From contig NC_043004.1 in NCBI RefSeq assembly GCF_006345805.1, positions 92,256,001-92,320,000 of the forward strand: 64,000 nt of DNA. Direction: 5' to 3'. Shown here piece after piece: positions 2,133-60,880 of the stretch (its first letter is position 1; the number at the start of each line of letters is the position of its first letter). Source of the DNA: Octopus sinensis. Its lineage: Eukaryota. The position numbers and the translations under genes are program-made. Under the pieces are notes generated by a model. The model was not told where the DNA came from and made no database searches. It worked only from the letters and a program-made list of their open reading frames with translations.

Positions 2133-2429
2133 TTATCAATAACATAGTTTTGTGTTGTACTACATATTCACTTACACAAACATGCGCATACATATTCACT
2201 CGTACTCTCACGCATATTATGTATGCGTATATATGTGTATATGATTACATATATGTCAGCTTCACTTATTCGTTGAAGTAAATTTGACCTTGACGATGTG
2301 TTCCCTATCCACTTGCTCGGTTACTCATCTCGTTATTGCTCTCTCTCTCTCTCCTTATCTCAATGTTCTTTCTGTTTCTACCCCCTTCTTCTCTCTCTCT
2401 CTTAAACTCTTTTCTCTCTCTTAACCACA

Positions 2430-2504
2430 AATCTAAATATACTTTTGTTTTTTTCTGTTTTCAGGTAAGAAAATCTTTAACGTATTCCTTCACTTACGGT
2501 AAAT
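2430..2504 (+). promoter_or_regulatory. Candidate recursive splice site (AG 2463-2464 | GT 2465-2466) with a downstream secondary donor at 2499
   Basis: cttttgtttttttctgttttcag|gtaaga; branch-like ctaaat at 2433-2438; long pyrimidine run from ~2336; second donor acg|gtaaat 34 nt downstream. Confidence 0.55.
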
Positions 2505-6139: not shown

Positions 6140-6530
6140 GTTTAGTTAGTTAGTTAATTTTTGGCTCAAAAAGCAAAAAGCAAGGCCATGTAGGGGGACA
6201 TGGAGTTATGTACAGGGTGGTATTCATGTAAAGAGTTCAGGCCACTTGAGGTCAAGGGAGACTTTGAACAAAGCGGTCGTCGGCATCTTCACCATCTCGT
6301 CTGGCAGCTTCTTCCACGGATCCGCAACCCGGACGGAGAAAGCCCCTCTCCTTCGATTGAGATGAAATCGTCGCAGATAGAGCTTTTCGGAATGACCCCG
6401 CAACCGACGCTCTGGAGCAGGAGTGAAGAACAGCTCTTTCGAGAGGTTACACTTTCCGCTTATGATGTTATGAGCGAGAATGAGATCACCACGGCGGCTA
6501 AAGTGCTATTCAAGTATTGGTGGCGATTAA
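6140..6530 (-). mobile_element. CR1-clade LINE 3' end
   Basis: The - strand translates RRGDLILAHNIISG...LRGHSEKL...RRRGAFSVRVADPWKKLPDEMVKMPTTALFKVSLDLKW (CR1-type ORF2 C-terminus), followed by a (TAAC)n tail. Confidence 0.8.
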
Positions 6531-6970
6531 ATCAACTCTCAATATTTCAGGCCTTGTAAATGGTTTATGTTGTGTATATGTCATATTTTATACACTAACA
6601 TATATCAACTTGTGTGACGTCATGCAATACGTCACAATACCTCATGACGTCACCACAGTTTATTGTGAACTTATAAGCATTTGAAGTATGGTAGCATTTA
6701 CTAATTCGCAAATGAATTAGCAAGAAATACCTAAATGAAAGAAAAAATAGCGATAAACATTGCGTGAATTTGGAAATGAGAGGCAAATAGACATAAACAT
6801 ACTGGTAATATGTTGTTGCGTACTCAAGGTTAGCTCTGATTGTTCAAGTCCATGGCCGATGGCGTTTGAGCCATGATCATCCCCATCCGCTCGAGTATAG
6901 CAGCATACTAGAAATACGCCATTTTCCCTTGAGTAATTTGTGAGAGTTTTGTATTTTATGTGTTATGCAT

Positions 6971-7391
6971 ACTCTCTCTTTTACTCTTTTACTTGTTTCA
7001 GTCATTTGACTGCGGCCATGCTGGAGCACCGCCTTTAATCGAGCAAATCGACCCCGGGACCTATTCTTTTTGTAAGCCCAGTACTTATTCTATCGGTCTC
7101 TTTTGCCGAACCGCTAAGTAACGGGGGCGTAAACACACCAGCATCGGTTGTCAAGCAATGCTAGGGGAACAAACACAGACACACAAACAAACACACATAC
7201 ATATATATATATATATATACATATATACGACAGGCTTCTTTCAGTTTCCGTCTACCAAATCCACTCACAAGGCACTGGTCAGCCCGGGGCTATAGCAGAA
7301 GACACTTGCCCAAGATGCCACGCAGTGGGACTGAACCCGGAACCATGTGGTTGGTAAGCAAGCTACTTACCACACAGCCACTCCTGCGCCT
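6971..7391 (-). mobile_element. SINE family A, near full length (tRNA head, CORE-like block, internal microsatellite, LINE-like tail)
   Basis: The - strand begins GGCGCAGGAGTGGCTGTGTGG (A-box) with B-box GGTTCAGTCCC and cttgggcaagtgtcttct; (TA)/(TG) insert; ends GGCGGTGCTCCAGCATGGCC...(AAGAGTAA)n. Confidence 0.9.
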
Positions 7392-7645
7392 ATATATGTG
7401 TATACTTTGTGTACATGTTCGTGTACATATATGTGTATTTTAGACAGGGGAACACACGAATGCAGAATGCAAGATACACACATAAGCAGGTGGGAAAAAG
7501 AGAAGTAGAGAGAGAGTCTGGTTTAAACACTGTTACTTGGGAAAGAATAAAGAAATGAAAAAAAAAAACTTTGAAAATATAAAAAGATGAACAATAAACT
7601 ACTAGTGAAATGCTAAAAACATTTCACACACGGAAAGAGTGAGAA

Positions 7646-15415: not shown

Positions 15416-15445
15416 TTATATGTGTGTGTATGCTATATATATATA

Positions 15446-15605
15446 GGCGCAGGCGTGACTGAGCGGCAAGAAACTTGTTTCCCAACCACATGGTTTCGGA
15501 TTCAGTCCCACTGCGTGGCACCTTGGGCAAGTGTCTTCTACTATAGCCTCGGGCCGACCGAAGACTTGTAAGTGGATTTGATAGACGGAAACTGAAAGAT
15601 GTCCG

Positions 15606-15664
<59 letters not shown>

Positions 15665-17019: not shown

Positions 17020-19621
17020 CACTGGTTTTTGTAAAAATGACTATTTGCTATTTTGATATTTTTGTCTTCGGTTCGTTAATCAAATTTCCTAAAAACAATT
17101 TATGTTCTAAACAATTTTACATTTTTTTCCGCTTACCAATATACCATTTTATACATTTACTTAATGATTTTGCAACTATAATTATACGACTACGATGGAG
17201 ACTATATTTCGCTGATGAGGTCAGCAAAAAGCAAACACATCCTTTGGCCTGTTTTATTAATTTTTAGTGTTTTAGTGTTCTATGTTAACACTAATTTACC
17301 TCTTAGCTTAAAACCTGATATGTATTTTACTAGTAACAGGTTCGAATATTAAAAAAATGTCTTCAATGATATAGCGCCGTAAAAAGTCCATTATTATCCG
17401 AGACAGATTTCATATATTTCAGTATAGCTTTACCTTCTAGGAGAAATCGATTTTTGAGCTGTGGACGTAAATGGTTTCCAATATAAACAAAGCTTCTATC
17501 AACACTATTTTTTTTCAATTTTTACCTCGTTATTATAGTTTAGTATTTTATCTTTTATATGTTTTAGAACTTATATATAGTGATCCTCACTATTAAAAAA
17601 TAATGATAAATAATGATACACAATAAATAGGTTTAAAGATTTGGTTGTCACCTTGAATGCGTTAGTGTCTAAACAAAAACTGTCTCTTTTCCTGTTCACT
17701 TTGGAACTTACTTTGATAATATTAGGCTGTTTTATGTGTGAGTGTGTAGTGGTGATATTGAGCTAGGAAAGTTACTAAACAGAAATTAACGGCCTCCCTA
17801 CCGCTCTTCTCTCTCCCCCTCTCTCTCTGATTAGTGTTTACTTTAATAGTGTTAGAGTGTTTTGTTGGGGTATGGTTTTTAATGTAATATCATACAGACT
17901 CAGGTACTAAATAGGGGCTTTTCCAATCGTCCATTTGATTAGGCATTAAATGTTTGCAAGGATTGTATTAGATTCCTCTGCCATATCGAATAAAGCAAGA
18001 GATCTCATGGATACTTTCACATTGACTCTTGTGGCCTTTACTCGAGAATATTCTAGAGTGTTTTTAGTCCTGCTGCTGAGCTACTAGAGGGACAATATGA
18101 GGGTAGATTCAGGGCTTCATGAAGTCCTATTTTGTTTCTCTCCTTGGCACGAGGATATAGATTTTCGAGGATGGGTTAGCGGATTTGTCTGGTGGATATT
18201 TTATCGACCCTGCTAATATGAAGGATGATTAATTGTAATGTTAACAGATGTGAGTTCATGTCATACGTGCAACCTTCGAATTTTTTCGATCCGAAGGGGT
18301 TTTAACTCGATATTTACACAGTTATTTATGACTTTAATTGCTTTGAGAGCCACCATTCGAAGAAAGAATTATTGATAAACAAAGGAGGTGCAGTAGTTTA
18401 AATACATAGAGGTGATACGAAGAAAGGATGTCCGATAAGTCGAGTTTCTTTTTTCTCACTGCAATTCACCCTATGATGCATTGCGAATCGGTCTGTTAGT
18501 TGATGTATGCTTCCAGATTGCAAACGTTTTCTGTAGTTTTTTTTATTGGTTTGTTAAGCTAATTAATTTTAATGAAAAGAACTCAAATCTCTTATATTAT
18601 AGAGCATTTTTGAGAGGCTGGCATTGTCATGTATATGACAATCACCAGAAAGACATGAGCTTGTGTGTATGCCTGTGTGAGAGGGGGGGGGCAGACAGAC
18701 ACACAGACAGACACATTGGAAGCCAAGCAGACAAATAGAGACAAATAGGCGGAGAGACTGATAGATAGACAAATAGTCGGAGAGACAAATAGACAGAGAA
18801 GCAAAGATAGGATAGAACGGTAGAGAAAGAAAACGATTCGAACATTGTTTGCTACTTTATTTTATTGATTCTGAGGCGATGAAAAATAAATGCGACCTTA
18901 AGGGAACCTCAACTCAGGATACAAAGAGCTAGAATAAATGCTGCAAACTTTTTATCCGACGCTCTCACGTTTCTGTCCATAGAATGGTAATTCCACTTCT
19001 TCTTAGAATATTTGTTCACGACTCAGATTCTCATAAGTTTTCTTTCGATTCTGTATTTTGCTTTATAAATCACAAATCACATTCTTTTGAATGAAATGGC
19101 GAGGAATTTCGAGAGGAATATTTATCCAATAGATTGGACTAATTCAGTTTCACAAGCAGCTGATATATTCTTCCATAGAGCATGGGACGTTGTTTCTGAT
19201 ACTTGAGTTTGCTGTTATTGAAACGGCTGATAGATTTCGATTATATGTTTATCTCTGTACGATTGGATGCATGTGTGAGTGTATGTGTGAGTGTATGTGT
19301 GTGTGTTTGTGTGTGTGTGTGTGTGCATGTGTATAAGTGTGTGCGTGTGCATGTTCATGTCTCAGGCAACGATAAGTGCGTTCGCAATTGTCTTTGATTC
19401 TGTATATATCTGCGTGTATGTATGTGTGCGCTTTGCACTATGTTTGGTGTATTAGTTTTATTTCAGAGCATATGTGTTTATTTGCGTATGGATGTGTGTG
19501 TACATATGTGCGTTTGTGTGTGTGTACAAGTTAGAGATTCAGATTGTGTATATGTGTTTATGTTGTGTGTATGTATGCATATATATATATATACATGCAT
19601 ATATATATATATATGTATGTG

Positions 19622-19660
<39 letters not shown>

Positions 19661-20629
19661 ATGTATATATACATGTATATATATATATGCATATAGATGT
19701 GTGTGTGCGTATATATATATGTGTGTGTATCAAAACAACAACAAAGCGGATATATACGAAAAATGGCTCAACCGGACCCCGTTAATCCTCCCACGTAAAT
19801 TCCAGTTCAAAGCTATTACAGAAGAACCTGAAACACAAAGACACCTCAGGGAGAGAATGGCACTGGAAAAAATGAAAATGGAAATAGAACTTCTGAAATT
19901 GAGGGCCCAAACGAATGAGGATAAAATAAAATCCACCGATGAAGATATCAACGAAGAAATTCGCAAAATGACCCAAGGCCCAGATCAAGAGAAGTTCTCC
20001 AAACTATGGAAAGAGGACTGTGAAAAAGAAGAACTAAAATCTCTCCAACGCTGGGAGAAAAGCGCCACTTGGTTCTCAGACTATGAAGCCGTCTTTCAAA
20101 CAGAGCACGCCTCCAACAACCCTTTCCAGAAAATAAGAAAACCAAAACAACACCCAAACACCGATACACACCTGTCTAAAAATCGGAACCTTCACTACTA
20201 TCAAAAAAAGAATACAGGACCTAACCCTAACTCTGTAAGCAGCCAGCGATACAATATCAGGAATACCCCCACTTCAAGCAGAGAAAGGATAAATCAACAC
20301 CCACAGCATAGACACTGCAACCTCATCCCCACCCAAAGGAGTTACCAACGAAATCTTCGTCCCACATTAACCGGTTAAACAACCATGCACAACAAACCCA
20401 CACCACTTGCAATGATTACCAACGAAGGCCTCCTAGAACACCACACCCGAATATGGGATATCGGGATGCTCTCCTCAATACTGCTCCAAGAACACACACC
20501 ATAAATCACAACAGGAGACCCCTAATCAACAAAGAACAACTATATACTAGCTACCATCCCAACCACCGCATTCATTTTTTAGACCCAATACGCAAACACA
20601 GAGACACAAGATAGCACCAAACAAGCAGG

Positions 20630-22900
20630 AGGAACCAAAAGTAATAAAAATTATTAATCTAACTCACAAGGAACTAACAGCAAACCAAATAAACATACTT
20701 TCCAAAGGACTTAAGTTTACACCCACCCCACAACACCCCAACTACAATGAAATGAAAGAAGACATCGCAGAATTCTGCAGAAAATTAAGACTTACTGAGG
20801 AGCTATACGATAAATACAACGAGGACGAATCGTTAGCCAGAATAGGAGTAACTACACCCCCTCGAAAGGTAAGAATAAAACACTTGATGATTTCTGTGAC
20901 CACATATCAAATTACCCATATCAACATATGCACAAACAAAAACACAAACCAAACTTCAGCAAAAAAGAATGGGCTGAGTTGAACAAATTAAAACTAGATA
21001 AAACAATAACAATCAAAGAGGCCGATAAAGGGAGTGCTGTTGTCTTAATGGATACGACATTTTACATAACTTTGGTACTTTCTATGCTGGAAGACACAAC
21101 ATACTGTGAAAAGGCACAAAACTACAGTCAACAAAAAATAATGAGGGAACTAAAATCCATATTAAACCCATACAAAGCAGGGCTCACCGACAAAGAATAT
21201 GATTATATGACCAATTTCACAAGTAAAACTAGCCAATTCTACGGTATACCTAAGATCCACAAAAGTGAAAAAATAAGCAACGCATGCAAGATAGCTACAG
21301 ACATAATAATTAAAGTCCCTAATCCTAATGACCTCAAATGAGACCCATAATAGCAGGTCCCGCATGCGAAACCCACCGCCTCAGTAACTTTTTAGACACC
21401 CTGTTAAAACTACTCCTCAAACATGTCAAAAGCTATATAAGGGACGACTTAGATATGCTCAATCACCTACCGAATACTATAAACAAAAACACCATACTGT
21501 ATCCTTCGATGTAGTCAACCTCTACTCCAATATCCCCCACAACCTAGGACTAGAGGCAATCCAATTCTGGCTAGAGAATCACGCCAACGAACTACCACAC
21601 CGCATCAAAAAAGAATTTGTGATAGAAGGGGTTAAATTCATCCTGGAATAAACTTCTTCGCCTTCAATGACAACTTCTACCGACAAAAATCGGGGACTGC
21701 GATGGGTACACGAATGGCCCCCTCCTTTGCCAACCTAGTCATAGGATACCTAGAGATCAGTCTGTATCGTAAGGTTCTAGAAAGATATGGCAGCCCTTTC
21801 TCCATCTACATAGAAAACAACTGGAAGAGATATCTAGATGACTGTTTCATCCTTTGGCATAAAAATATAGAAAAACTCATAGAATTCCAGAAAATTTTAA
21901 ACGGACTGGACGTAAACATCCAATTCACGATGGAATATAGCCAACAACAACTCCCCTTCCTCGATATCCTCATTAAGAAAGCTAATAATATAATAGAAAC
22001 AGACATATACTATAAGCCTACAGACTCTAAGCAATATCTTCCATTCAATTCATGCCACCCCAGACACACCAGGATGAATATCCCCTTCAATCTAGCAAAA
22101 AGGATATGCACTATAGTCTCTAACGCAAACACCAGAGACACACGACTACAAGAACTAAAAGATACCCTAATCACCAGGAACTATCCACCTTCACTTATTG
22201 ACAAGTGCATTCAACGTGCCCTTCAACTTAACATCAAGGAACTGAGACATCCCAAATCAAAGAAAAACTTACAACCAAAAGCCTTACCATACATCTCCAC
22301 ACACAACCCTCTCAATAACGAAGCCTTCGACACCATCCTCCACAACATACCCCTCCTAAAAAAAGACCACAGAATGAACACAATCCTCCAAACACACACG
22401 ATCATAAAAAGCAAAAGACAGCCTAGATCCATGAAAAGTCTCCTTACACAAGCCCGAATTCACTCTTCAACACAGAAGCCGACAGTAAAAAAATGTGGAA
22501 GACCCAATTGCGGGATATGCGACTATCTAATTGAGGGCTCAGAGTTCTCCTTCAAACAGGGACAACGGTTTACAGTGAAAAGCAACTTCACATGTGCTTC
22601 GGAGAACCTAATATACTCACTAACCTGCTCCGGGTGTCAAGAGCAGTGCATAGGCCAAACAAAAATGGTTTGCGTAAACGAATGGCCCTGCACAGATCCC
22701 AGATAAAAATTCCCCAAAACAGAAAAATAGCTTTTAGCCAACACATAGATACTTGCGCCAACAAAAAAAACACCAAACTTCAGAATTTTCCCCCTCTACC
22801 AATTTAGGGACGATACAACCTCGAGACAACGAATAAGTAAAGAAAATCTCTTATTACAAAATACAAGCCACTTCTTAACGGGTCTACGACAAACAATTAA
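20630..22900 (+). pseudogene. Disrupted Penelope RT + GIY-YIG endonuclease ORF
   Basis: ORF-track pieces 20752-20982, 20928-21341, 21702-22706 and 22592-22807 join across frameshifts and stops into one PLE polyprotein. Confidence 0.88.
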
Positions 22901-32250: not shown

Positions 32251-32949
32251 TCTTGTAAAAAAGCACATGCTCAAGGAGCGAGCGTGTCTCAGAAATTCTG
32301 CTCTCATTGACATCGATCACATTCAGACTTCACAATCTAAGAGTCGCATCGCGTATTGCTTCCTCCAGCCGACACCATTGCTACGTGCATTTATGTATTT
32401 CACTCTTCATTGCAACGTTCTGACTTATTTGTGACATACTACGAATGTGCATGAAGAGAATCAACTTTTTCTTTTTAGTTGCAAATTCAGTTCTTTAGAA
32501 GGGTTTGTCCTGAAATTGTTGGATATTAAATAAGGATAACCATCTTCTGATGGGCAAAGTAGCACCATGTCGCCTGCAAATATCAGCCAACGGATTCACT
32601 AACCAACGATTGTGATACAGCTTCCACAAACGTCTGAGCATGTCAATGCCTTCCATTAAAATTACGAAAAGGCAAAGTGACGATATGCCTCCTGCCGGAG
32701 TTCACGTTGAGCGTTTTGACTCAGCACCATTGAACCGAACACAAAGATCTAGACATTCGCATAAAGACTTCGCATAACTAGATGATGCCCATAAATCCAA
32801 ACTCCTGCAAACCCCCACCCCATAGTATGTCACACAGTATGCGATCACATATGCCATTTCGAGGCACATTTATGTCTGAAAATAGCATTATTCCACACTG
32901 CACCCATATTATAAGGTCGATCCGGCCCTAGCTGAAGACAGACAGACAG

Positions 32950-33290
32950 AAAATGGAAAGTCCAGGAGGTGGCGGATGCAGTAAAGGAAAGCCTTACGAT
33001 CAGAGAAATATTGGGACACACTCAGGTCAATAGACATGGTCTGGGGGTGCGTAACAAAAATGGAAAGATGGACAGCGACCCGGGAAAGATGAGGAAAGGT
33101 CTGATTTTAGAAAAGGAAGAAGATGCAATACGAATCCTGAAGATAGTACAGTAGAGCCAACAGGACCAGTAGATGATGTGGAAAGGTGCTTTCCAGAAGT
33201 GTCTCAGCTGGAACAACCTGTGGAATGTGGCACTTCTGAGAATACCTTTTATCCTCAGATCTATCTATGATCTCTCATCTATGATCTACA
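32950..33290 (+). mobile_element. HERO/NeSL-like non-LTR retrotransposon fragment
   Basis: REILGHTQVNRHGLG...Q*SQQDQ*MMWKG...LSWNNLWNVALLRIPFILRSIYDL resembles the HERO-type motif GxxxxGRxGLG...QQGxWxxW...TWxxLW...RISFLLRSVYD (recalled consensus). Confidence 0.5.
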
Positions 33291-34214
33291 TTCGAATATG
33301 GACCTTGGGAATTTCTTACCACTACTCAGGACTTTCAAGCAACACAAACACTAACAAGTCATTGTCAGTAACTATATAACTAATAGTTACTCTCAGAACT
33401 ACAGCGAAAGACATTAAATATAAAATAAACCACTTATTATATTATATTATAGCAACTTCTAGCTTATACAAATGCAGAATTTGAATCAGAGACAGGCATT
33501 AAAGGTGAGTTAAGTGCATGGCTGGTACACCAAAATATAATAATATAAACATTGAAAATTGACGTCATAAGAATTTTATACGTTTCGAGACAACGTGAAA
33601 TAATTCTGTTTTGGAAGAGTGGATCCCAAAGCACATAAAACTAATGGCATGTGAATATTGGGTTCAAAAACCCCTTTCGTATTAAGACGTCGGCTGACTG
33701 TGGGACATGAACCCACATATCCAATTAAAATATTAGTTACGTCTACAGGAGGTGTGGATTCGTGTTAGATGGGCAACCTTCGATTTTTTTTTTATCTAAA
33801 GGATTTTTCAGCCCAAAATTTACATGTTATTATTCATACCTTTAAGTGCTTCGAAATCCGGTGCTCCAAGAAAGAAATATTAACTGCTGAATCGAGAGAA
33901 AATGAATAACAGATTTGCGCAAAATAGTTGTTTTTCGTTAAAAAATTCCCAGTATTTCAATGACAAAACTCCATATTATCTTTGCTGTAATTACATTGCT
34001 ATTAACAAAAGCTGGTGATATAAATAAGTGTCAGCATTCCATTTTTGTTAGATTCTATATGAGAATACAGAGCGTGAAATCTTTATGGGAGTTCTTCGTA
34101 TGAATATTCAATTGCATTGATTTTTTCTTCAACTGTGATTACCGTAAGAATGGGGTTTAGAATAATAGCATAATGCAAACTACTTTTTACAAATGCAGCC
34201 AATACATATGGAAG

Positions 34215-42845: not shown

Positions 42846-43427
42846 ATATTATATGTACACACACCACACACACACACACACACGCATACACACACATATG
42901 GGGGAGAAACAAAGTGAGGAGCAGAATTGTATAGGCACATATGGACAATGTCTAGTGGGCGTATTTTGGGCTACGATAGATCCCACGCTCCTCACAAACA
43001 CACACACATACGCACACGCACACATGCAAAAACTCACACACATTCACACACACATGTAAGCATTCGCTCAGCTTTATATGCATGCATGTTCATTTGTGTA
43101 TGTACGTATTATGTATATAGGTATACATACATATATGTATGTACTTGAGTATTTGTGTAGACCCGTAAAAATGTTCGTCTGTTGAGGTATCCCTGTTTGG
43201 ATTCCCAGTACTCCACTTACTTCTGTATCAGCAGCGTGCCTGTGCTCAGCTGGGTGTGTCCCTTGGATTGTGTTGAAATAAAAAAGAGAATGTGATATAG
43301 AATCGAGCGTTGATCAAAGAATTCTTAATTAATAATATTGGCGTAAGGTTTAATTGGGGTGATAACAGAAAACGAGACGATATAAGGATAGCTGTGGAGA
43401 TGCCGTTACCGTTGGTAATGATTGACA

Positions 43428-44236
43428 TGGTGGAGGTGGTTGTGGTTGTGGTGGTGGTGATGGTGGTGGTGGTTGTGGTGGTGGTGGTTGTGGTGGTGGT
43501 GGTAGTGGTGGTGGTGGTGATGGTGGTGGTGGTCGTCGTCGTCGTCGTGTTGTTTGTGGTTGTGATGGTGGTGGTGGTGGTTGTTGTAGTGGTGGTGGTG
43601 GTGGTGGTGGTTGTGGTGGTGGTGATGGTGGTGGTGGTGGTTGCGGTGGTGGTGGTGGTGGTGTTTGTGGTTGTGGTGGTGGTGTTTGTGGTTGTGGTGG
43701 TGGTGGTGGTGGTGGTGGTGGTTGTGGTGGTGGTGGTAGTGGTGGTGGTGGTGGTGTTTGTGGTTGTGGTGGTGGTGATGGTGGTGGTGTGGTGGTGGTG
43801 GTGGTGGTGGTGTTTGTGGTTGTGGTGGTGGTGGTTGTGGTGGTGGTGGTTGTGGTGGTGTGATGGTGGTGGTGGTGTTGCGGTGGTGGTGGTGGTGTTT
43901 GTGGTTGTGGTGGTGGTGTTTGTGGTTGTGGTGGTGGTGATGGTGGTGGTGGTTGTGGTGGTGGTGGTAGTGGTGGTGGTGGTGGTGTTGTGGTTGTGGT
44001 GGTGGTGATGGTGGTGGTGGTGGTTGCGGTGGTGGTGGTGGTGTTGTGGTTGTGGTGGTGGTGTTTGTGGTTGTGGTGGTGGTGATGGTGGTGGTGGTTG
44101 TGGTGGTGGTGGTAGTGGTGGTGGTGGTGGTGTTTGTGGTTGTGATGGTGGTGATGGTGGTGGTGGTGGTGGTGGTGGTGGTGGTGGTGGTGGTGGTGAT
44201 GCTTGTGGTGGTGATGGTGGTGGTGGTCGTCGTCGT
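43428..44236. repeat. ~810 bp imperfect (GGT)n array with higher-order periodicity
   Basis: GGT units interrupted by TGT, AGT, GAT and GTTTGT in recurring order; contains frameshifts. Confidence 0.95.
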
Positions 44237-44261
44237 GATGTAGATTAGGCCCTCCGTTGCT

Positions 44262-44540
44262 TACGACGCCGAGTGCTCCAATTTATCCTGATCGTGAAAC
44301 TAATGTGCAAGTGGTTGAGCATTCCACAGACGCGTTTGTTTATTCTTAACGTAGTTCTCGGAGAGATTCAGCGCAACACGGAATGTTACGAGAGCGGCCC
44401 TTTGAATTTTAGCCAGTTGAGTGAACTGGAGCAACATGAAATAAAATCTCTTGCTCAATGACACAACGTACTGCCGGGAATCGAACTCAGGACCTTACGA
44501 TCGCGAGCCGACTATCCATTAAACCACGCGTCTTCACTCG
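44262..44540 (-). mobile_element. tRNA-derived SINE (family C-like), diverged
   Basis: ctggagcaacatgaaat...cttgctcaatgacacaacg...gggaatcgaactc...aaccacgcgtcttcac is the reverse complement of a head like that at 2817. Confidence 0.65.
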
Positions 44541-45720: not shown

Positions 45721-45939
45721 TTACTCTTTTACTCTTTTACTTGTTTCGGTCATTTGACTGCAGCCATGCTGGAGCACCGCCTTTAGTCGAGCAAATCGAC
45801 CCCAGGACTTATTCTTTGTAAGCCCAGTACTTATTTTATCGGTCTCTTTGCCGAACCGCTAAGTGACGGGGACGTAAACACACCAGCATCGGTTGTCAAG
45901 CAATGCTAGGGGGACAAACACAGACACACAAACATATAC

Positions 45940-45972
<33 letters not shown>

Positions 45973-46143
45973 CATATATACGACAGGCTTCTTTCAGTTT
46001 CCGTCTACCAAATCCACCCACAAGGCATTGGTCGGCCCGGGGCTATAGCAGAAGACACTTGCCCAAGATGCCACGCAGTGGGACTGAACCCGGAACCATG
46101 TGGTTGGTTAGCAAGCTACTTACCACACAGCCACTCCTGCGCC
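45721..46143 (-). mobile_element. SINE family A, near full length
   Basis: Same architecture as 6971-7391 and highly similar in sequence. Confidence 0.92.
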
Positions 46144-47226
46144 TATGTGGAAAAGAACAATGGTTTCCTGCGCGATAAATTTGTCCAAAAATTGTGAGAA
46201 GACAATTTTTAAAGATTAATTTTGTGACAATTATATAATAGTTACTTCTTTGTGACTACGGGGTGGGTATAAGCATGATGTTGTTTTTATGTATTTCTAG
46301 AATTGAGGTGTATTCAGTGATAGGGGCTAGCTGATTTTGTAATTTTATGTATGCGTTATTAGGTTTCAGTCGTGTGGTTTCTCAGAGTATCTCTTATGAA
46401 GTTACAATATCAGTAAATTCTGTAGTTTTAAAACTAAAGAAAAAGAATCCACATTCTCTCAAAAGAAAGGTTAGATAGAGCCCTGGCAAAAGTGGGATCC
46501 AACATGTGCTCGCTCAACCGAGCAATGTTTAGAGAAGCGGGTGGTTCTTCCTGAAGAACCAGGATCATGTGAAGAGATAGTACAACTAGAGCGACATAGC
46601 CGTTATGGGACTGGTAACGCAGAGCAAGTCTCAAGAGTAAGTAGATTCTGGATCACAAGTAGAAATATTTTCACAAGCATTGATACTTGACATTTTGCCA
46701 CCTTAGCAAAAGTACAGATATGGGATGAGCATGGAGGTGGTTCGTAACAAAATGCAGTCGGTTGGAGACTGCATAACGTATAGGTCCTAATAAGTTCCAA
46801 AGACCACCACACTATCCAGGAGCTCTATATTCCATAAGGCATCAGAAATAAAGTAGGACAATCGAACTGGTAATGCAAGGCAGTATGAACTGTTGCTAGA
46901 CACGTGGCAGAACTTGCTATTTGAGTGTCATTTTTCGTAGACTGACAAAAAAACACTTAGAAGTAAAAATTTGACAGCAGATAATTGAAGGAGTACCAAT
47001 AGCAATATCCCCCATTGTGCCGCAGAGACAAAGACTGTTTGTGCTGGTTGTGTTGAGTGAAAAGGAGGGGGTGAACAAGAAAGAGTTTTGTGCTTGGTAA
47101 ACTGTTAAGTATTGATCCATTCATCAAGTAATGGCGTAAGCTTCTGGTTCAATAGCTACTTACTGAAGTGACTAAATTTGGTCGCAAATTCTGAGTGCGT
47201 GCTGGTGTGTGTGTATGTGTGAGCAC

Positions 47227-48089: not shown

Positions 48090-49003
48090 CAATATACTCG
48101 CCATTTGCTTCAACTACGGCTTCCAGACGACTTTGGAAATTACTGCAACTCCTTTGGACGGTCCCCTCGTTTAAGTTGATGAATTTCTGACATAATCCTT
48201 GCCTTCAGTTCATCTTTGGTGTTACAAGGACCTTTCTAGATCTCTTGCTCAACTGAGCCCCGCACATAATACTCAAGGGGCTTGCAGTCTGATTAGTTAG
48301 ATGGCCAGATGATAAGAGTGATGTGGTCGCACAAATTATCTGACAGCCATGACTGGGTCCTCCTGCTCGTGTGCCATGGTGCAGAGTCCTGTTGCTAGAC
48401 GTAAGGTCTTCCAGCAGCCATCCTCTTGACCCAGGACAGCACTACCTCCTCCAGGCGCTGTGTTGAGTCTGAGGCCGTATGGGAAGATGAATGGAGGCAT
48501 AACTTGCCATCATTGGTCATCACTCCAAACACCATGATGTTGACTGAATGTTCGATTTTTATTATTCTCGGTATTTGTTTTGGGGACACGACAAGCCAAA
48601 AGTTGTTCTGTGTGTTTATCATCTGATCCTCGCAGAAATTTTTCTCGTTTGAGAAAAACAAAGGAATGTTCGGTTTGAGGGGATGCTTGAGTTTGTTCAA
48701 AACCTTCGTAGCGGGGTCTTTCCTCTTGTCCCTGATGCCTTGGGATAAAAACTGGCCTTTTCTCATCTTGTATAACGAATACTGAATGTCTTCATGCACT
48801 ACCTGCCTGATAAGAAACTCAGACACTCCTTGTCCTTCGCGATGGACCTGATTGACTTGGAAGGATCGTTGTTAATCACGACCTGGATCTCTCCAACAAA
48901 TTAAGCAGTTCGTTTCTTATCAGAACGATCAGAGTGAGTTTTCCGAGCTACCATTTTGTATTGAAAATATGAAATGGCGACAATTTATTCATCACACCCT
49001 GTA
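48090..49003 (-). mobile_element. Decayed Tc1/mariner (maT-like, DD37 spacing) transposon
   Basis: The - strand translates FFSNEKNF...MVFGVM...QQDSAP-(37 aa from D)-SDCKPLEY; the end at 49001 reads TA|CAGGGTGTGATG; the opposite end is degenerate (tcgccattt at ~48098). Confidence 0.85.
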
Positions 49004-49341: not shown

Positions 49342-50354
49342 TGTACATTTATGTGTGTGTGTGTGTGTATGTGTGTGTACGTATGTATGTTCATATGTAT
49401 GTGTGTCTGAGTTTATATGTATGAATAAAAGTTCTCTCTTAGAGGTACATAACAGAAAAATTAGGCGTTGGTAATGTGACTATTTTCATTTATTCATATC
49501 ATAAATAAATAAGATAGAATTATGGTAGAATCTGCCTTTGTGCGTTAATCTTTGTCTCTGCTAAGAACAGAGTGGTCACATATTTTTATATTTTGCTGTG
49601 CTGTAGCTCGTTATAGGCTAGACATCAAGCTTATGTGGCAAGTTAATTTTTTTTTTTGTGAAATGAAATCTTGAAGTTAAAGAATTTTGTGTTAACAGAC
49701 TTTTAAAAAAAATTGTCTTTGACTACGTGTCTCTATTTGGATTTGTTTCAACTTTCGTTGAAATCACCGCCAGTAGTTGTTTAACACATTTAACTCTCTA
49801 CAAATATATTTGCTATAAAGGCAAAAATATTAGAGGCTAATATAAACTGGATAAGCGAATTTGCATTTTGAACAGTTACTTGACAGCGAGATTAACCAGC
49901 AAACTATTGATGTTTAAACAGTGTTTTGTTTCATTGTTGCAATGCAGTACAGGACATATTTACAGATTTAGTACTGTAAGTTACAACGAATTTAAACAAT
50001 ACGTCTACAAAATGTTCGTCGGCAGAAATAGAGAGAACTGATGTACATACATTTCGACCCTTGTTGGTGTCATCGTCAGTAACTGAGCACGACCGCCAAC
50101 TAGCCACAAGCACATCGCTTATAAACCGACTTATATTAATGTTCGACCTCACTACCATTAAAATACAACGTCGTGTATAACATACGGTAAGCTTGACGAC
50201 TGAAGTTTTAGCTTCAATTTCCTCTGAAACTTCAATTTCCTCTGCGATAGGCATACTTCCTATCCAAGGTGACATTATATTTTTAAACATTTGAATGGAA
50301 AACATTAAATTGAAAAAAAAAAGAAATAATTCAATGACTTTGAATAATTTATTT

Positions 50355-50513
50355 GTACTAAATGTTTTAATGTTTTTTTTTTCTTCTCTTTCTCTTTTAG
50401 GTAAGTCATATGCTTTTGTTTAAATACAATTCTGCGCTGCTGAGAATGGGAATAGACAACAAAATGATGAAATCAGTACTATAAAAAAAATGAAGAAAAT
50501 CAAACAGGTATTT
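50355..50513 (+). promoter_or_regulatory. Candidate recursive splice site (AG 50399-50400 | GT 50401-50402) with a secondary donor at 50508
   Basis: tactaaa branch-like motif at 50356-50362; tgtttttttttttcttctctttctcttttag|gtaagt (consensus acceptor and consensus donor); caaacag|gtattt 107 nt downstream. Confidence 0.65.
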
Positions 50514-58955: not shown

Positions 58956-59024
<69 letters not shown>

Positions 59025-59040
59025 AGTGTGTGTGTGTATA

Positions 59041-59250
59041 TGTTTGTGTGTCTGTGTTTGTCGCCCTAGCATTGCTTGAAAACCGATGCTGGTGTGTTTA
59101 CGTCCCCGTCACTTAGCGGTTCGGCAAAAGAGACCGATAGAATAAGTACTGGGCTTACAAAGAATAAGTCCTGGGGTCGATTTGCTCGACTAAAGGCGGT
59201 GCTCCAGCATGGCCGCAGTCAAATGACTGAAACAAGTAAAAGAGATATAC
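59041..59250 (+). mobile_element. SINE family A 3' half
   Basis: cctagcattgcttgaaaaccgatgctgg...ggcggtgctccagcatggccgcagtcaaatgactgaaacaagtaaaagag; no head upstream of the microsatellite. Confidence 0.85.
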
Positions 59251-59259
59251 GCGCATATA

Positions 59260-60880
59260 TATTATTTTATTCTTTTATTATTTTACACATTTCAGCCCTA
59301 ATGTTGTGGCCATGCTGGAGCACCGCCAGTGTAATCACCTTTTCAATGGCCAATCTTATGTGATTGTCGTTCGGTGAAGGAGGGAGTTCAACACTGCTGC
59401 CCTCTTTTGAATCACCCGCCTTGATATTGGTTAATCTGGGACCTTGGATATCAGGAGGCCAAGCTGTTTCTTGTCCCACTCCATGAAGGTCCTGCAAATG
59501 TTTTAGCAAGTCGGTAAATAGCCGTGGGTCCTTGAATCCCAAACTATTGCAGCAAATAATCCTCACTCTAGATGAGATAGCTGGGACCTTTAGAACAGTG
59601 CAGTGACGTCCAGTTCGATACCAAAACTCCTCCAGGCTCTTTCATACCTCTCCCGTCTTCGCTCCAGAGAGTAGGGTCGTAGTTATTTCAGTTTCCTCCC
59701 AGTAGCTCAGTTGTTCCATTGATGCGATCTTTTTTGTATAACATTGCTGAACTGCCTCAAGTTCCGTTATTAATCTGACACTGTAAGGTGACCACATTTG
59801 AGAGCAGTAGTCCAGATGGCTGAAGACAAATGTCCTCAGTTGAACCGTATATTTTACTTGTCCCCTGTTCTGAAGGTTCACAGAATCCATCCAGCCATTC
59901 GCCTGCACGCTGCCACCATCTTGGTGATATGCATGTGAAACAAAGCATCGTTGCTCATATCAATCCCGAGATCATACACTGTACGTGATTCTGGATTTGC
60001 CGCACCTTTTGGTCCAAAGTATCGTTGTTGCGACCTGTGAACACCAATTAGCTGATAGCAGAGGGCTTGAAATTTGCCTGCATTAAATTGCATGTTGTTA
60101 TCCTCAGCCCATTTATATATGGCATCTAGGTCATTCTGCCGAAGATTAGCATCAGAAGGTCCCTTGACTGTTTGTTCTAGTTTTGTGTCATGGACATAGC
60201 TAGTAATTATGGCTGTCTGTGTAACTGATGGCATGTCTGAAAGAGCCACGATGAACAACGGCTCCAATACAGTTCACTAAGGCACTCTGCTTTCTATTAC
60301 TGTCTCCATGGAGACGACTCCATTGGCTACCTCCATTGGCTATTTAAGAAGTCATGCAATCACTTTCCAAGTTTTCTGGCTATGTCAAGTCTCCGTAGCT
60401 TGTGACATCCTATGATCAACTTTATCAAAAGCCTTTCCAAAGTCAAGATACATCACATCCACGTTTGAGAGATTCCTTAATTGTTTCATCACCCAGTTAT
60501 AGTGCTGCAAAAGTTGTGTAAGGCAGCTTCTTCCTGAGCAAAAGCCATCTTGGGTGTCAGGAGGTAAGTCATTATCTTCAAGGAACGTAATGTGTTTCTT
60601 CCTGACAATGTGATCCATGATTTTGTTGACATGGGAGGCTAGAGAGGCAGGTCTGTAATTTTTGGTATCTGCTCTGCTACCTCCCTTATGCTTTTCTTTA
60701 ACATTTTGGGGGGAAGTTTCCCTGTTATGAAGAAGCTCTGAAAGAGAATCTGAAGTGGTCTTGATAGAATCCCTTTGTGTTATTTTAGGAGGATTGATGG
60801 GAATCCATCAGGGCCTATAGTCGAGCTGTAGCTCATTTCATTATTGATCGATATCACGCCTGTCTTCTCTGTTTTCATGG
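59260..60880 (-). mobile_element. CR1-clade LINE, 3' ~1.6 kb with disrupted RT
   Basis: QDGFCSGRSCLTQLL...MYLDFGKAFDKVDH, SYVHDTKL (YADD position), DLDAIYKWAEDNNMQFNAGKF, RTFVFSHLDYCSQMWSPY; the 3' end carries GGCGGTGCTCCAGCATGGCCAC. Confidence 0.9.

What the first reader, a model, noticed from the sequence alone, without database searches (positions are those of the whole stretch)
2336..2504. Second same-strand recursive splice site candidate, 47.9 kb upstream
Seen: a long pyrimidine-rich run from ~2336, a branch-like CTAAAT (2433), a U-rich tract, CAG|GTAAGA, and a second donor ACG|GTAAAT 34 nt downstream. Same strand and same architecture as the 50400 site. Other AGGTRAG occurrences I noticed (e.g. 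~10006, ~20867, ~33505, ~60562) lack a pyrimidine tract. Inference: two ratchet points subdividing one intron.
Basis: partly seen in the sequence, partly recalled or inferred. Interest (0 to 1): 0.7.

Follow-up and report, generated by a model that had tools for sequence, protein, structure and literature searches.

The report
Candidate recursive splice site, octopus intron
At 2464/2465 a very strong intron-end signal sits directly against an intron-start signal, the signature of a "ratchet point" that lets a giant intron be removed in pieces. It is far too good to be chance, and it lies in an octopus-like genome where such sites have not been described, but no RNA evidence or host gene could be obtained here.

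Summary
It follows a 170-nt pyrimidine-rich, AG-free tract, and a weaker donor ACG|GTAAAT lies 34 nt downstream. The same architecture occurs on the same strand at 50400 (TTTTAG|GTAAGT).

It is not chance. Of 3,121 YAG trinucleotides on both strands, only these two have a T-rich tract with at least 18 of 20 pyrimidines, and both are followed directly by GTAAG. A Y14-AGGTAAG pattern gives 2 matches against 0.01 expected. Permutation p values run from 0.0009 to 0.007. The two flanks are unrelated and are not repeats.

Both sites carry the TT at -5/-6 found in 196 of 197 Drosophila ratchet points. In both, the regenerated donor is stronger than the downstream donor, as the cryptic RS-exon model requires.

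The window is octopod DNA: its SINEs are 85-94% identical to Octopus vulgaris SINEs. I recognised no coding exon on either strand.

Not shown: the host gene and its strand, RNA junctions, and cross-species conservation.

Verdict: a good sequence-level candidate for a zero-nucleotide recursive splice site, a known kind in a phylum where it is unreported. Confidence about 0.55.

The parts
2294..2462 (+). Extended pyrimidine-rich tract, at least 80% Y in 100-nt windows, containing (CT)7.5 at 2339-2353. It sits in an AG-free zone of 186 nt, 2277-2463.
   Evidence: The AG-free gap ranks 13th of 3,532 on the + strand.
2421..2438 (+). Candidate branch-point region. TTAAC at 2421-2425 fits yTnAy, with the branch A at 2424, 40 nt from the 3' splice site.
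   Evidence: Motif match only.
2442..2464 (+). Proximal T-rich polypyrimidine tract plus CAG 3' splice site: cttttgtttttttctgttttCAG, with TT at -5/-6 and C at -3.
   Evidence: 18 of 20 Y and 16 of 20 T, second best of 315 AG|GT sites.
2465..2470 (+). Regenerated 5' splice site GTAAGA, abutting the AG. This is the ratchet-point donor.
   Evidence: Core score 2.96, among the top 10 of 315. Full PWM score 7.0, among the 3 best donors on the + strand.
2465..2498 (+). Putative cryptic 34-nt RS-exon. Its length is not a multiple of 3.
   Evidence: Inferred from the RS-exon model (PMC8605326).
2499..2504 (+). Weaker downstream donor ACG|GTAAAT, the putative RS-exon donor.
   Evidence: PWM score 1.89. 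Not significant alone.
50367..50406 (+). Partner site. TTAAT branch-like motif at 50367-50371, a 96% Y tract at 50371-50398, then TAG|GTAAGT with the last G at 50400. A weak donor CAG|GTATTT lies at 50508 (+107).

Best explanation
Position 2464/2465 is a zero-nucleotide recursive splice site (ratchet point) on the + strand of a very long intron in an octopod gene. The proposed mechanism has four steps, all inferred and none shown.
1. U2AF and U2 recognise the long T-rich tract and CAG. U1 binding at the GTAAAT donor 34 nt downstream helps define a short cryptic RS-exon.
2. The upstream exon is spliced to 2465, which removes the first intron segment.
3. This places the exon end next to GTAAGA and regenerates a strong 5' splice site, which out-competes the weaker 2499 donor.
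4. That site is spliced onward to the next acceptor, plausibly the equivalent site at 50400 (47.9 kb away), and finally to the real downstream exon. No trace is left in the mRNA.
For: - The motif is exact and the tract exceptional.
- These are the only two strong T-rich PPT-YAG sites among 3,121 YAG, and both are followed by GTAAG. Of 70 relaxed PPT-YAG sites, only these two abut a donor.
- The pattern gives 2 matches against 0.01 expected. Permutation p is 0.0009 to 0.007.
- Both sites are on the + strand and none on the - strand. That equals 3.1 per 100 kb, against roughly 0.07-0.12 per 100 kb on complementary strands in other animals (Shepard 2009, PMC2773006).
- Both have TT at -5/-6, as do 196 of 197 fly ratchet points (Duff et al.).
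- The ratchet-point donor is stronger than the downstream donor at both sites: 7.0 against 1.89, and 6.1 against 0.77. This fits the donor-competition and cryptic RS-exon model, with short out-of-frame exons of about 50 nt (PMC8605326).
- The flanks of the two sites are unrelated and unique in the window, so they are not copies of one transposon.
- The 47.9-kb spacing lies within the fly segment range of 2.6-63.6 kb.
- I recognised no coding exon in the 64 kb, which fits a giant intron.
Against: - There are no RNA data.
- The host gene and its strand are unknown, and the window could be intergenic.
- There is no cross-species alignment.
- Base composition shows no transcription-type strand skew.
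- My thresholds were chosen after seeing the sites. The threshold-free test still gives p=0.007.
- The distal part of the pyrimidine run is partly a (CT)n microsatellite, in a genome full of simple repeats.
- Recursive splicing has not been demonstrated in any mollusc.
Confidence: 0.55

Rival explanations
1. An expressed RS-exon or poison exon. The AG at 2464 is the acceptor of a real 34-nt cassette exon (2465-2498) that is sometimes included through the 2499 donor. The leading GTAAGA would regulate inclusion, as with Ubx mI/mII or vertebrate RS-exons.
For: A downstream donor exists at +34, and two of the three frames are open. RS-exons can be expressed (PMC8605326 and PMC6224609).
Against: The 34-nt length would shift the reading frame. 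The 2499 donor is weak (1.89) against 7.0 for the ratchet donor, which predicts skipping. Its presence has a chance probability of about 5-17%.
Confidence: 0.15
2. Chance juxtaposition of a simple-repeat pyrimidine tract with an AGGTAAG heptamer in non-transcribed or antisense DNA.
For: The genome is very rich in microsatellites and pyrimidine tracts, with 10 clusters of at least 80% Y in the window. The tract includes (CT)n. Seven other AGGTRAG sites exist. No host gene is known.
Against: Two independent sites on one strand sit on the two best tracts of 315 AG|GT sites, both with TT at -5/-6 and Y at -3. p is 0.0009 to 0.007 before counting strand and TT, and 0 of 100 shuffles reach 2.
Confidence: 0.12
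3. A functional splice-factor binding element that is not a ratchet point. Examples are a decoy or pseudo-exon that regulates intron retention, a U1 site that suppresses premature polyadenylation, or splice sites of an unannotated non-coding RNA.
For: The same non-random sequence evidence applies, and the sequence alone does not say how the site is used.
Against: These functions do not require exact abutment of AG and GT at zero spacing, which is seen at both sites.
Confidence: 0.13
4. The reverse complement of the A-rich tail and 3' end of a retroposon on the - strand, which mimics a pyrimidine tract followed by AGGTAAG.
For: On the - strand both sites read ...CTTACCT followed by an A/G-rich run, and the window is full of SINEs and LINEs.
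Against: The sequences next to the two sites share no similarity beyond low complexity: local score 19, against a shuffle mean of 13.7 and maximum of 22. They have no other copy in the window or in 20.7 kb of O. vulgaris DNA.
Confidence: 0.05

Closest known systems
Drosophila zero-nucleotide ratchet points (Ubx, kuz, osp, luna, Bx; Hatton 1998, Burnette 2005, Duff 2015, Joseph 2018/2021)
   Same: Consensus (Y)n-NCAG|GTAAGT. An unusually prominent pyrimidine tract. TT at -5/-6. A short, out-of-frame cryptic RS-exon with a weaker downstream donor. Several sites on one strand, tens of kb apart.
   Different: The organism is an octopod mollusc. +6 is A rather than T. There is no junction, sawtooth, lariat or conservation evidence. 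The host intron is unidentified. The 47.9-kb segment is long compared with the fly mean of 18 kb.
Vertebrate recursive splice sites and RS-exons in long neuronal-gene introns (Sibley 2015; Blazquez 2018, PMC6224609)
   Same: An RS-exon is defined by a downstream 5' splice site, with competition between the regenerated donor and the RS-exon donor. They occur in very long introns.
   Different: Shepard et al. found little RP-site strand enrichment in vertebrate large introns, with ratios of 1.5 or less. Here the site looks like the insect type.
Computationally enriched RP-sites in large introns of sea urchin, mosquito, bee and beetle (Shepard et al. 2009, PMC2773006)
   Same: The evidence is of the same kind: motif matches enriched on one strand relative to the complement. 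That study reports 0.5-2.2 per 100 kb against about 0.1. This window has 3.1 per 100 kb on + and 0 on -.
   Different: That study used annotated introns and many loci. This is one window without annotation, and molluscs were not included.

Membership tests
Zero-nucleotide recursive splice site (ratchet point) | 3' splice site directly abutting a 5' splice site: (Y)n N C/T AG|GTAAG(T/A) | tested here: met
   ttttcag|GTAAGA at 2464/2465.
Zero-nucleotide recursive splice site (ratchet point) | Polypyrimidine tract more prominent than at ordinary sites, and TT at -5/-6 (196 of 197 fly sites) | tested here: met
   18 of 20 Y and 16 of 20 T. TT is present, against 32 of 315 background AG|GT sites (criterion).
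Zero-nucleotide recursive splice site (ratchet point) | Motif occurs more often than chance and on one strand only | tested here: met
   2 on + and 0 on -. Expected 0.01. p is 0.0009 to 0.007.
Zero-nucleotide recursive splice site (ratchet point) | Lies inside a long intron, on the sense strand of the host gene | tested here: inconclusive
   I recognised no exon on either strand. No strand skew. No Rfam host-strand marker. The host gene could not be retrieved.
Zero-nucleotide recursive splice site (ratchet point) | Downstream cryptic RS-exon donor that is weaker than the regenerated donor | tested here: met
   GTAAAT at +34 scores 1.89 against 7.0. The chance probability of such a donor is about 5-17%, so this support is weak.
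Zero-nucleotide recursive splice site (ratchet point) | Splice-junction reads from the upstream exon, sawtooth read density, and lariats from the ratchet point | not testable with these tools
   No RNA-seq access.
Zero-nucleotide recursive splice site (ratchet point) | Conservation island centred on AG|GT in related species | not testable with these tools
   No orthologous DNA was reachable. ORF look-ups and a metagenome scan gave nothing. Only an unrelated O. vulgaris locus was obtained.
Expressed RS-exon / cassette exon | Exon included in mRNA, usually frame-preserving or conserved | tested here: not met
   The frame-preserving criterion is not met: 34 nt is not a multiple of 3. Inclusion in mRNA is not testable with these tools.

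The most novel reading that the evidence does not exclude
These would be the first ratchet points identified in a mollusc or any lophotrochozoan. Insect-type zero-nucleotide recursive splicing would then operate in the giant introns of cephalopod genes. The mechanism would be ancestral to bilaterians rather than a fly speciality with a separate vertebrate variant.
Probability: 0.5. Interest if true: 0.55.

Novelty: new member of a known kind. Interest (0 to 1): 0.42.

Why it matters
Recursive splicing is well documented only in Drosophila and, less often, in vertebrates. Its distribution elsewhere rests on motif counts in a few insects and a sea urchin. Cephalopods have very large genomes, very long introns and large nervous systems, where genes with long introns dominate. 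A bona fide ratchet point in an octopod would extend the mechanism to a third major bilaterian branch. It would also give a concrete, testable locus: two sites 47.9 kb apart, each predicted to have a cryptic RS-exon. If it is not used, it is still a striking example of how good a splice-site mimic can be.

Tried and rejected
- **Host-gene and exon search.** I listed stop-to-stop ORFs of at least 50 aa in six frames, paired acceptors with donors, and ranked ORFs of at least 30 aa by amino-acid composition. Only transposon ORFs and simple repeats appeared. This search is crude and would miss short or non-coding exons.
- **Pfam on ten ORFs.** Only RVT_1 matched, in a LINE fragment.
- **The 162-codon open frame at 49934-50419 (-), which crosses the partner site.** It has no Pfam match, no homologue and no record, so it is not an exon of a known protein.
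- **Organism.** The Penelope-like ORF hits Argonauta hians and Octopus vulgaris best among named proteins. The SINEs are 85-94% identical to those on O. vulgaris chromosome OX597819.1. The window is therefore octopod. The window's own ORFs are not in the protein collection, so the orthologous locus could not be fetched.
- **Exact 25-mer scan of JGI metagenomes.** No hits.
- **Rfam over the whole window.** Nothing, so no intronic snoRNA or miRNA gives the strand.
- **Strand skew and poly(A)-signal counts.** No asymmetry.
- **Transposon orientation.** Mixed, so uninformative.
- **Same-transposon hypothesis for the two sites.** Rejected.
- **Last homologue search.** I left it unused. An old transposon fragment near either site is very unlikely to be an annotated gene in O. 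vulgaris.

Full report
**What is there.** The + strand reads ...ctaaatatacttttgtttttttctgttttCAG|GTAAGAaaatctttaacgtattccttcacttACG|GTAAATtac.
- The last intron-like G is 2464 and the abutting GT starts at 2465.
- The second GT starts at 2499, which is +34.
- CTAAAT lies at 2433-2438.
- The better fit to yTnAy is TTAAC at 2421-2425, with the branch A 40 nt from the acceptor.
- Upstream, 2336-2462 is 82% pyrimidine. 100-nt windows with at least 80% Y run from 2294 to 2463 and end exactly at the AG. This is one of only three such clusters on the + strand.
- There is no AG dinucleotide for 186 nt, the 13th longest of 3,532 gaps.
- Part of the distal tract is a (CT)7.5 microsatellite.
- The partner site is tgttttttttttcttctctttctctttTAG|GTAAGTcat, with its last G at 50400.

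**Is it more than chance?** Yes.
- AG|GTRAG occurs 8 times on + and once on -. Only 2464 and 50400 have a pyrimidine tract (18 and 20 of 20 Y).
- Approached from the other side: of 3,121 YAG on both strands, exactly two have at least 18 Y and at least 15 T in the 20 nt upstream. They are these two.
- With relaxed criteria there are 70 PPT-YAG sites, many inside SINEs. Only these two are followed directly by a donor.
- The pattern Y14-AGGTAAG with up to 1 mismatch gives 2 matches against 0.01 expected. None of 100 dinucleotide-preserving shuffles reaches 2.
- Whole-window shuffles destroy local pyrimidine tracts, so I also used an internal null. Among 315 AG|GT sites, the two best tracts both fall among the 10 best donors, p=0.0009. 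A threshold-free permutation of combined z-scores gives p=0.007.
- That is before counting that both sites are on the same strand, both have Y at -3, and both have TT at -5/-6. TT occurs at 10% of background AG|GT sites.
- The second donor adds little. A donor at least as good as GTAAAT lies within 120 nt by chance about 17% of the time.

**Not a repeat.** The site regions have no other copy in the window. The flanks of the two sites are unrelated beyond low complexity. This rules out two copies of one transposon, or the tail of one retroposon family read backwards.

**Context.**
- The window is 36% GC and crowded with microsatellites, SINEs, LINE fragments, mariner-like pieces and a near-intact Penelope-like element.
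- The best named relatives of the Penelope-like ORF are from Argonauta hians and Octopus vulgaris.
- The window's SINEs are 85-94% identical to SINEs on O. vulgaris chromosome OX597819.1. The DNA is therefore octopod.
- I recognised no coding exon on either strand, using ORFs, acceptor-donor pairing and amino-acid composition. This is a crude search that would miss short or non-coding exons.
- Rfam finds nothing.
- There is no strand compositional skew or poly(A)-signal asymmetry.
- The window therefore looks like one long non-coding stretch. That fits a giant intron but does not prove it.

**Comparison with what is known.**
[quoted passage not shown] 196 of 197 have TT at -5/-6. Segment sizes are 2.6-63.6 kb, with a mean of 18 kb (Duff et al.). 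Both sites here meet the sequence criteria, and the 47.9-kb spacing is within range.
- Joseph and Lai describe a short (about 50 nt), usually out-of-frame cryptic RS-exon with its own donor, which the ratchet donor out-competes (PMC8605326).
- Here the putative RS-exons are 34 and 107 nt, both out of frame. The ratchet donors score 7.0 and 6.1, against 1.89 and 0.77 for the downstream donors.
- Shepard et al. found 0.5-2.2 RP-sites per 100 kb in large introns of a sea urchin and four insects, against about 0.1 or less on the complement. Vertebrate ratios were 1.5 or less (PMC2773006).
- This window has 3.1 per 100 kb on + and none on -.
- In the held library, the three papers that contain both "recursive splicing" and a cephalopod or mollusc term each mention both terms only once, and by their titles none concerns recursive splicing in these animals.

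**Most likely mechanism (inferred).**
1. The tract and CAG recruit U2AF and U2.
2. The +34 donor helps define a cryptic exon.
3. The upstream exon is spliced to 2465.
4. The regenerated exon|GTAAGA donor wins over 2499 and is spliced onward, plausibly to 50400, and then to the true downstream exon.

**What is not shown.** The host gene, its strand, that both sites share one intron, any RNA intermediate, and conservation. Attempts to reach orthologous DNA failed. The window's ORFs are not in the protein collection, and a metagenome scan was empty.

**Verdict.** I give about 0.55 to a zero-nucleotide recursive splice site, about 0.15 to an expressed RS-exon, about 0.13 to another splice-factor element, about 0.12 to chance and about 0.05 to a transposon artefact. 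It is a new member of a known kind, and the interest is moderate.

Noticed in passing
window 19400-22850 (+): A near-intact Penelope-like retroelement, with ORFs at 19422-20378, 20928-21341 and 21702-22706. Homologues carry RVT_1, HTH_animal and GIY-YIG domains. It is 70% identical over 2.3 kb to a copy in O. vulgaris (L001).
   Followed up: partly
window 49934-50419 (-): A 162-codon stop-free frame that runs across the partner site at 50400. It has no Pfam match, no homologue among 5.8 billion proteins, and is not on record. About 0.16 such frames are expected per window (my rough estimate, not a tool result), so it is probably chance.
   Followed up: yes
window 59270-60807 (-), 6227-6505 (-), 48208-48871 (-), 32936-33267 (+): A LINE reverse-transcriptase fragment (RVT_1) and a LINE C-terminal tail, both on the - strand. 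There are also mariner-like pieces on both strands, identified by eye only. Orientation is mixed, so it gives no clue to the host strand.
   Followed up: partly
window 6963-7397, 15439-15662, 45724-46145, 59005-59244 and others: tRNA-derived SINE copies with internal (TA/TG)n. They are 85-94% identical to SINEs in O. vulgaris chromosome OX597819.1, which identifies the window as octopod.
   Followed up: yes
whole window: AG|GTRAG heptamers number 8 on + and 1 on - (p about 0.04), or 6 against 1 without the two candidate sites. Strong isolated donors lie at 33505 (AAG|GTGAGT) and 60564 (GAG|GTAAGT), with no pyrimidine tract or open exon upstream.
   Followed up: partly
window 43250-44300: A large GTT/GGT-type microsatellite block. 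It is 810 nt without AG on the - strand and causes the strong local GC skew.
   Followed up: no
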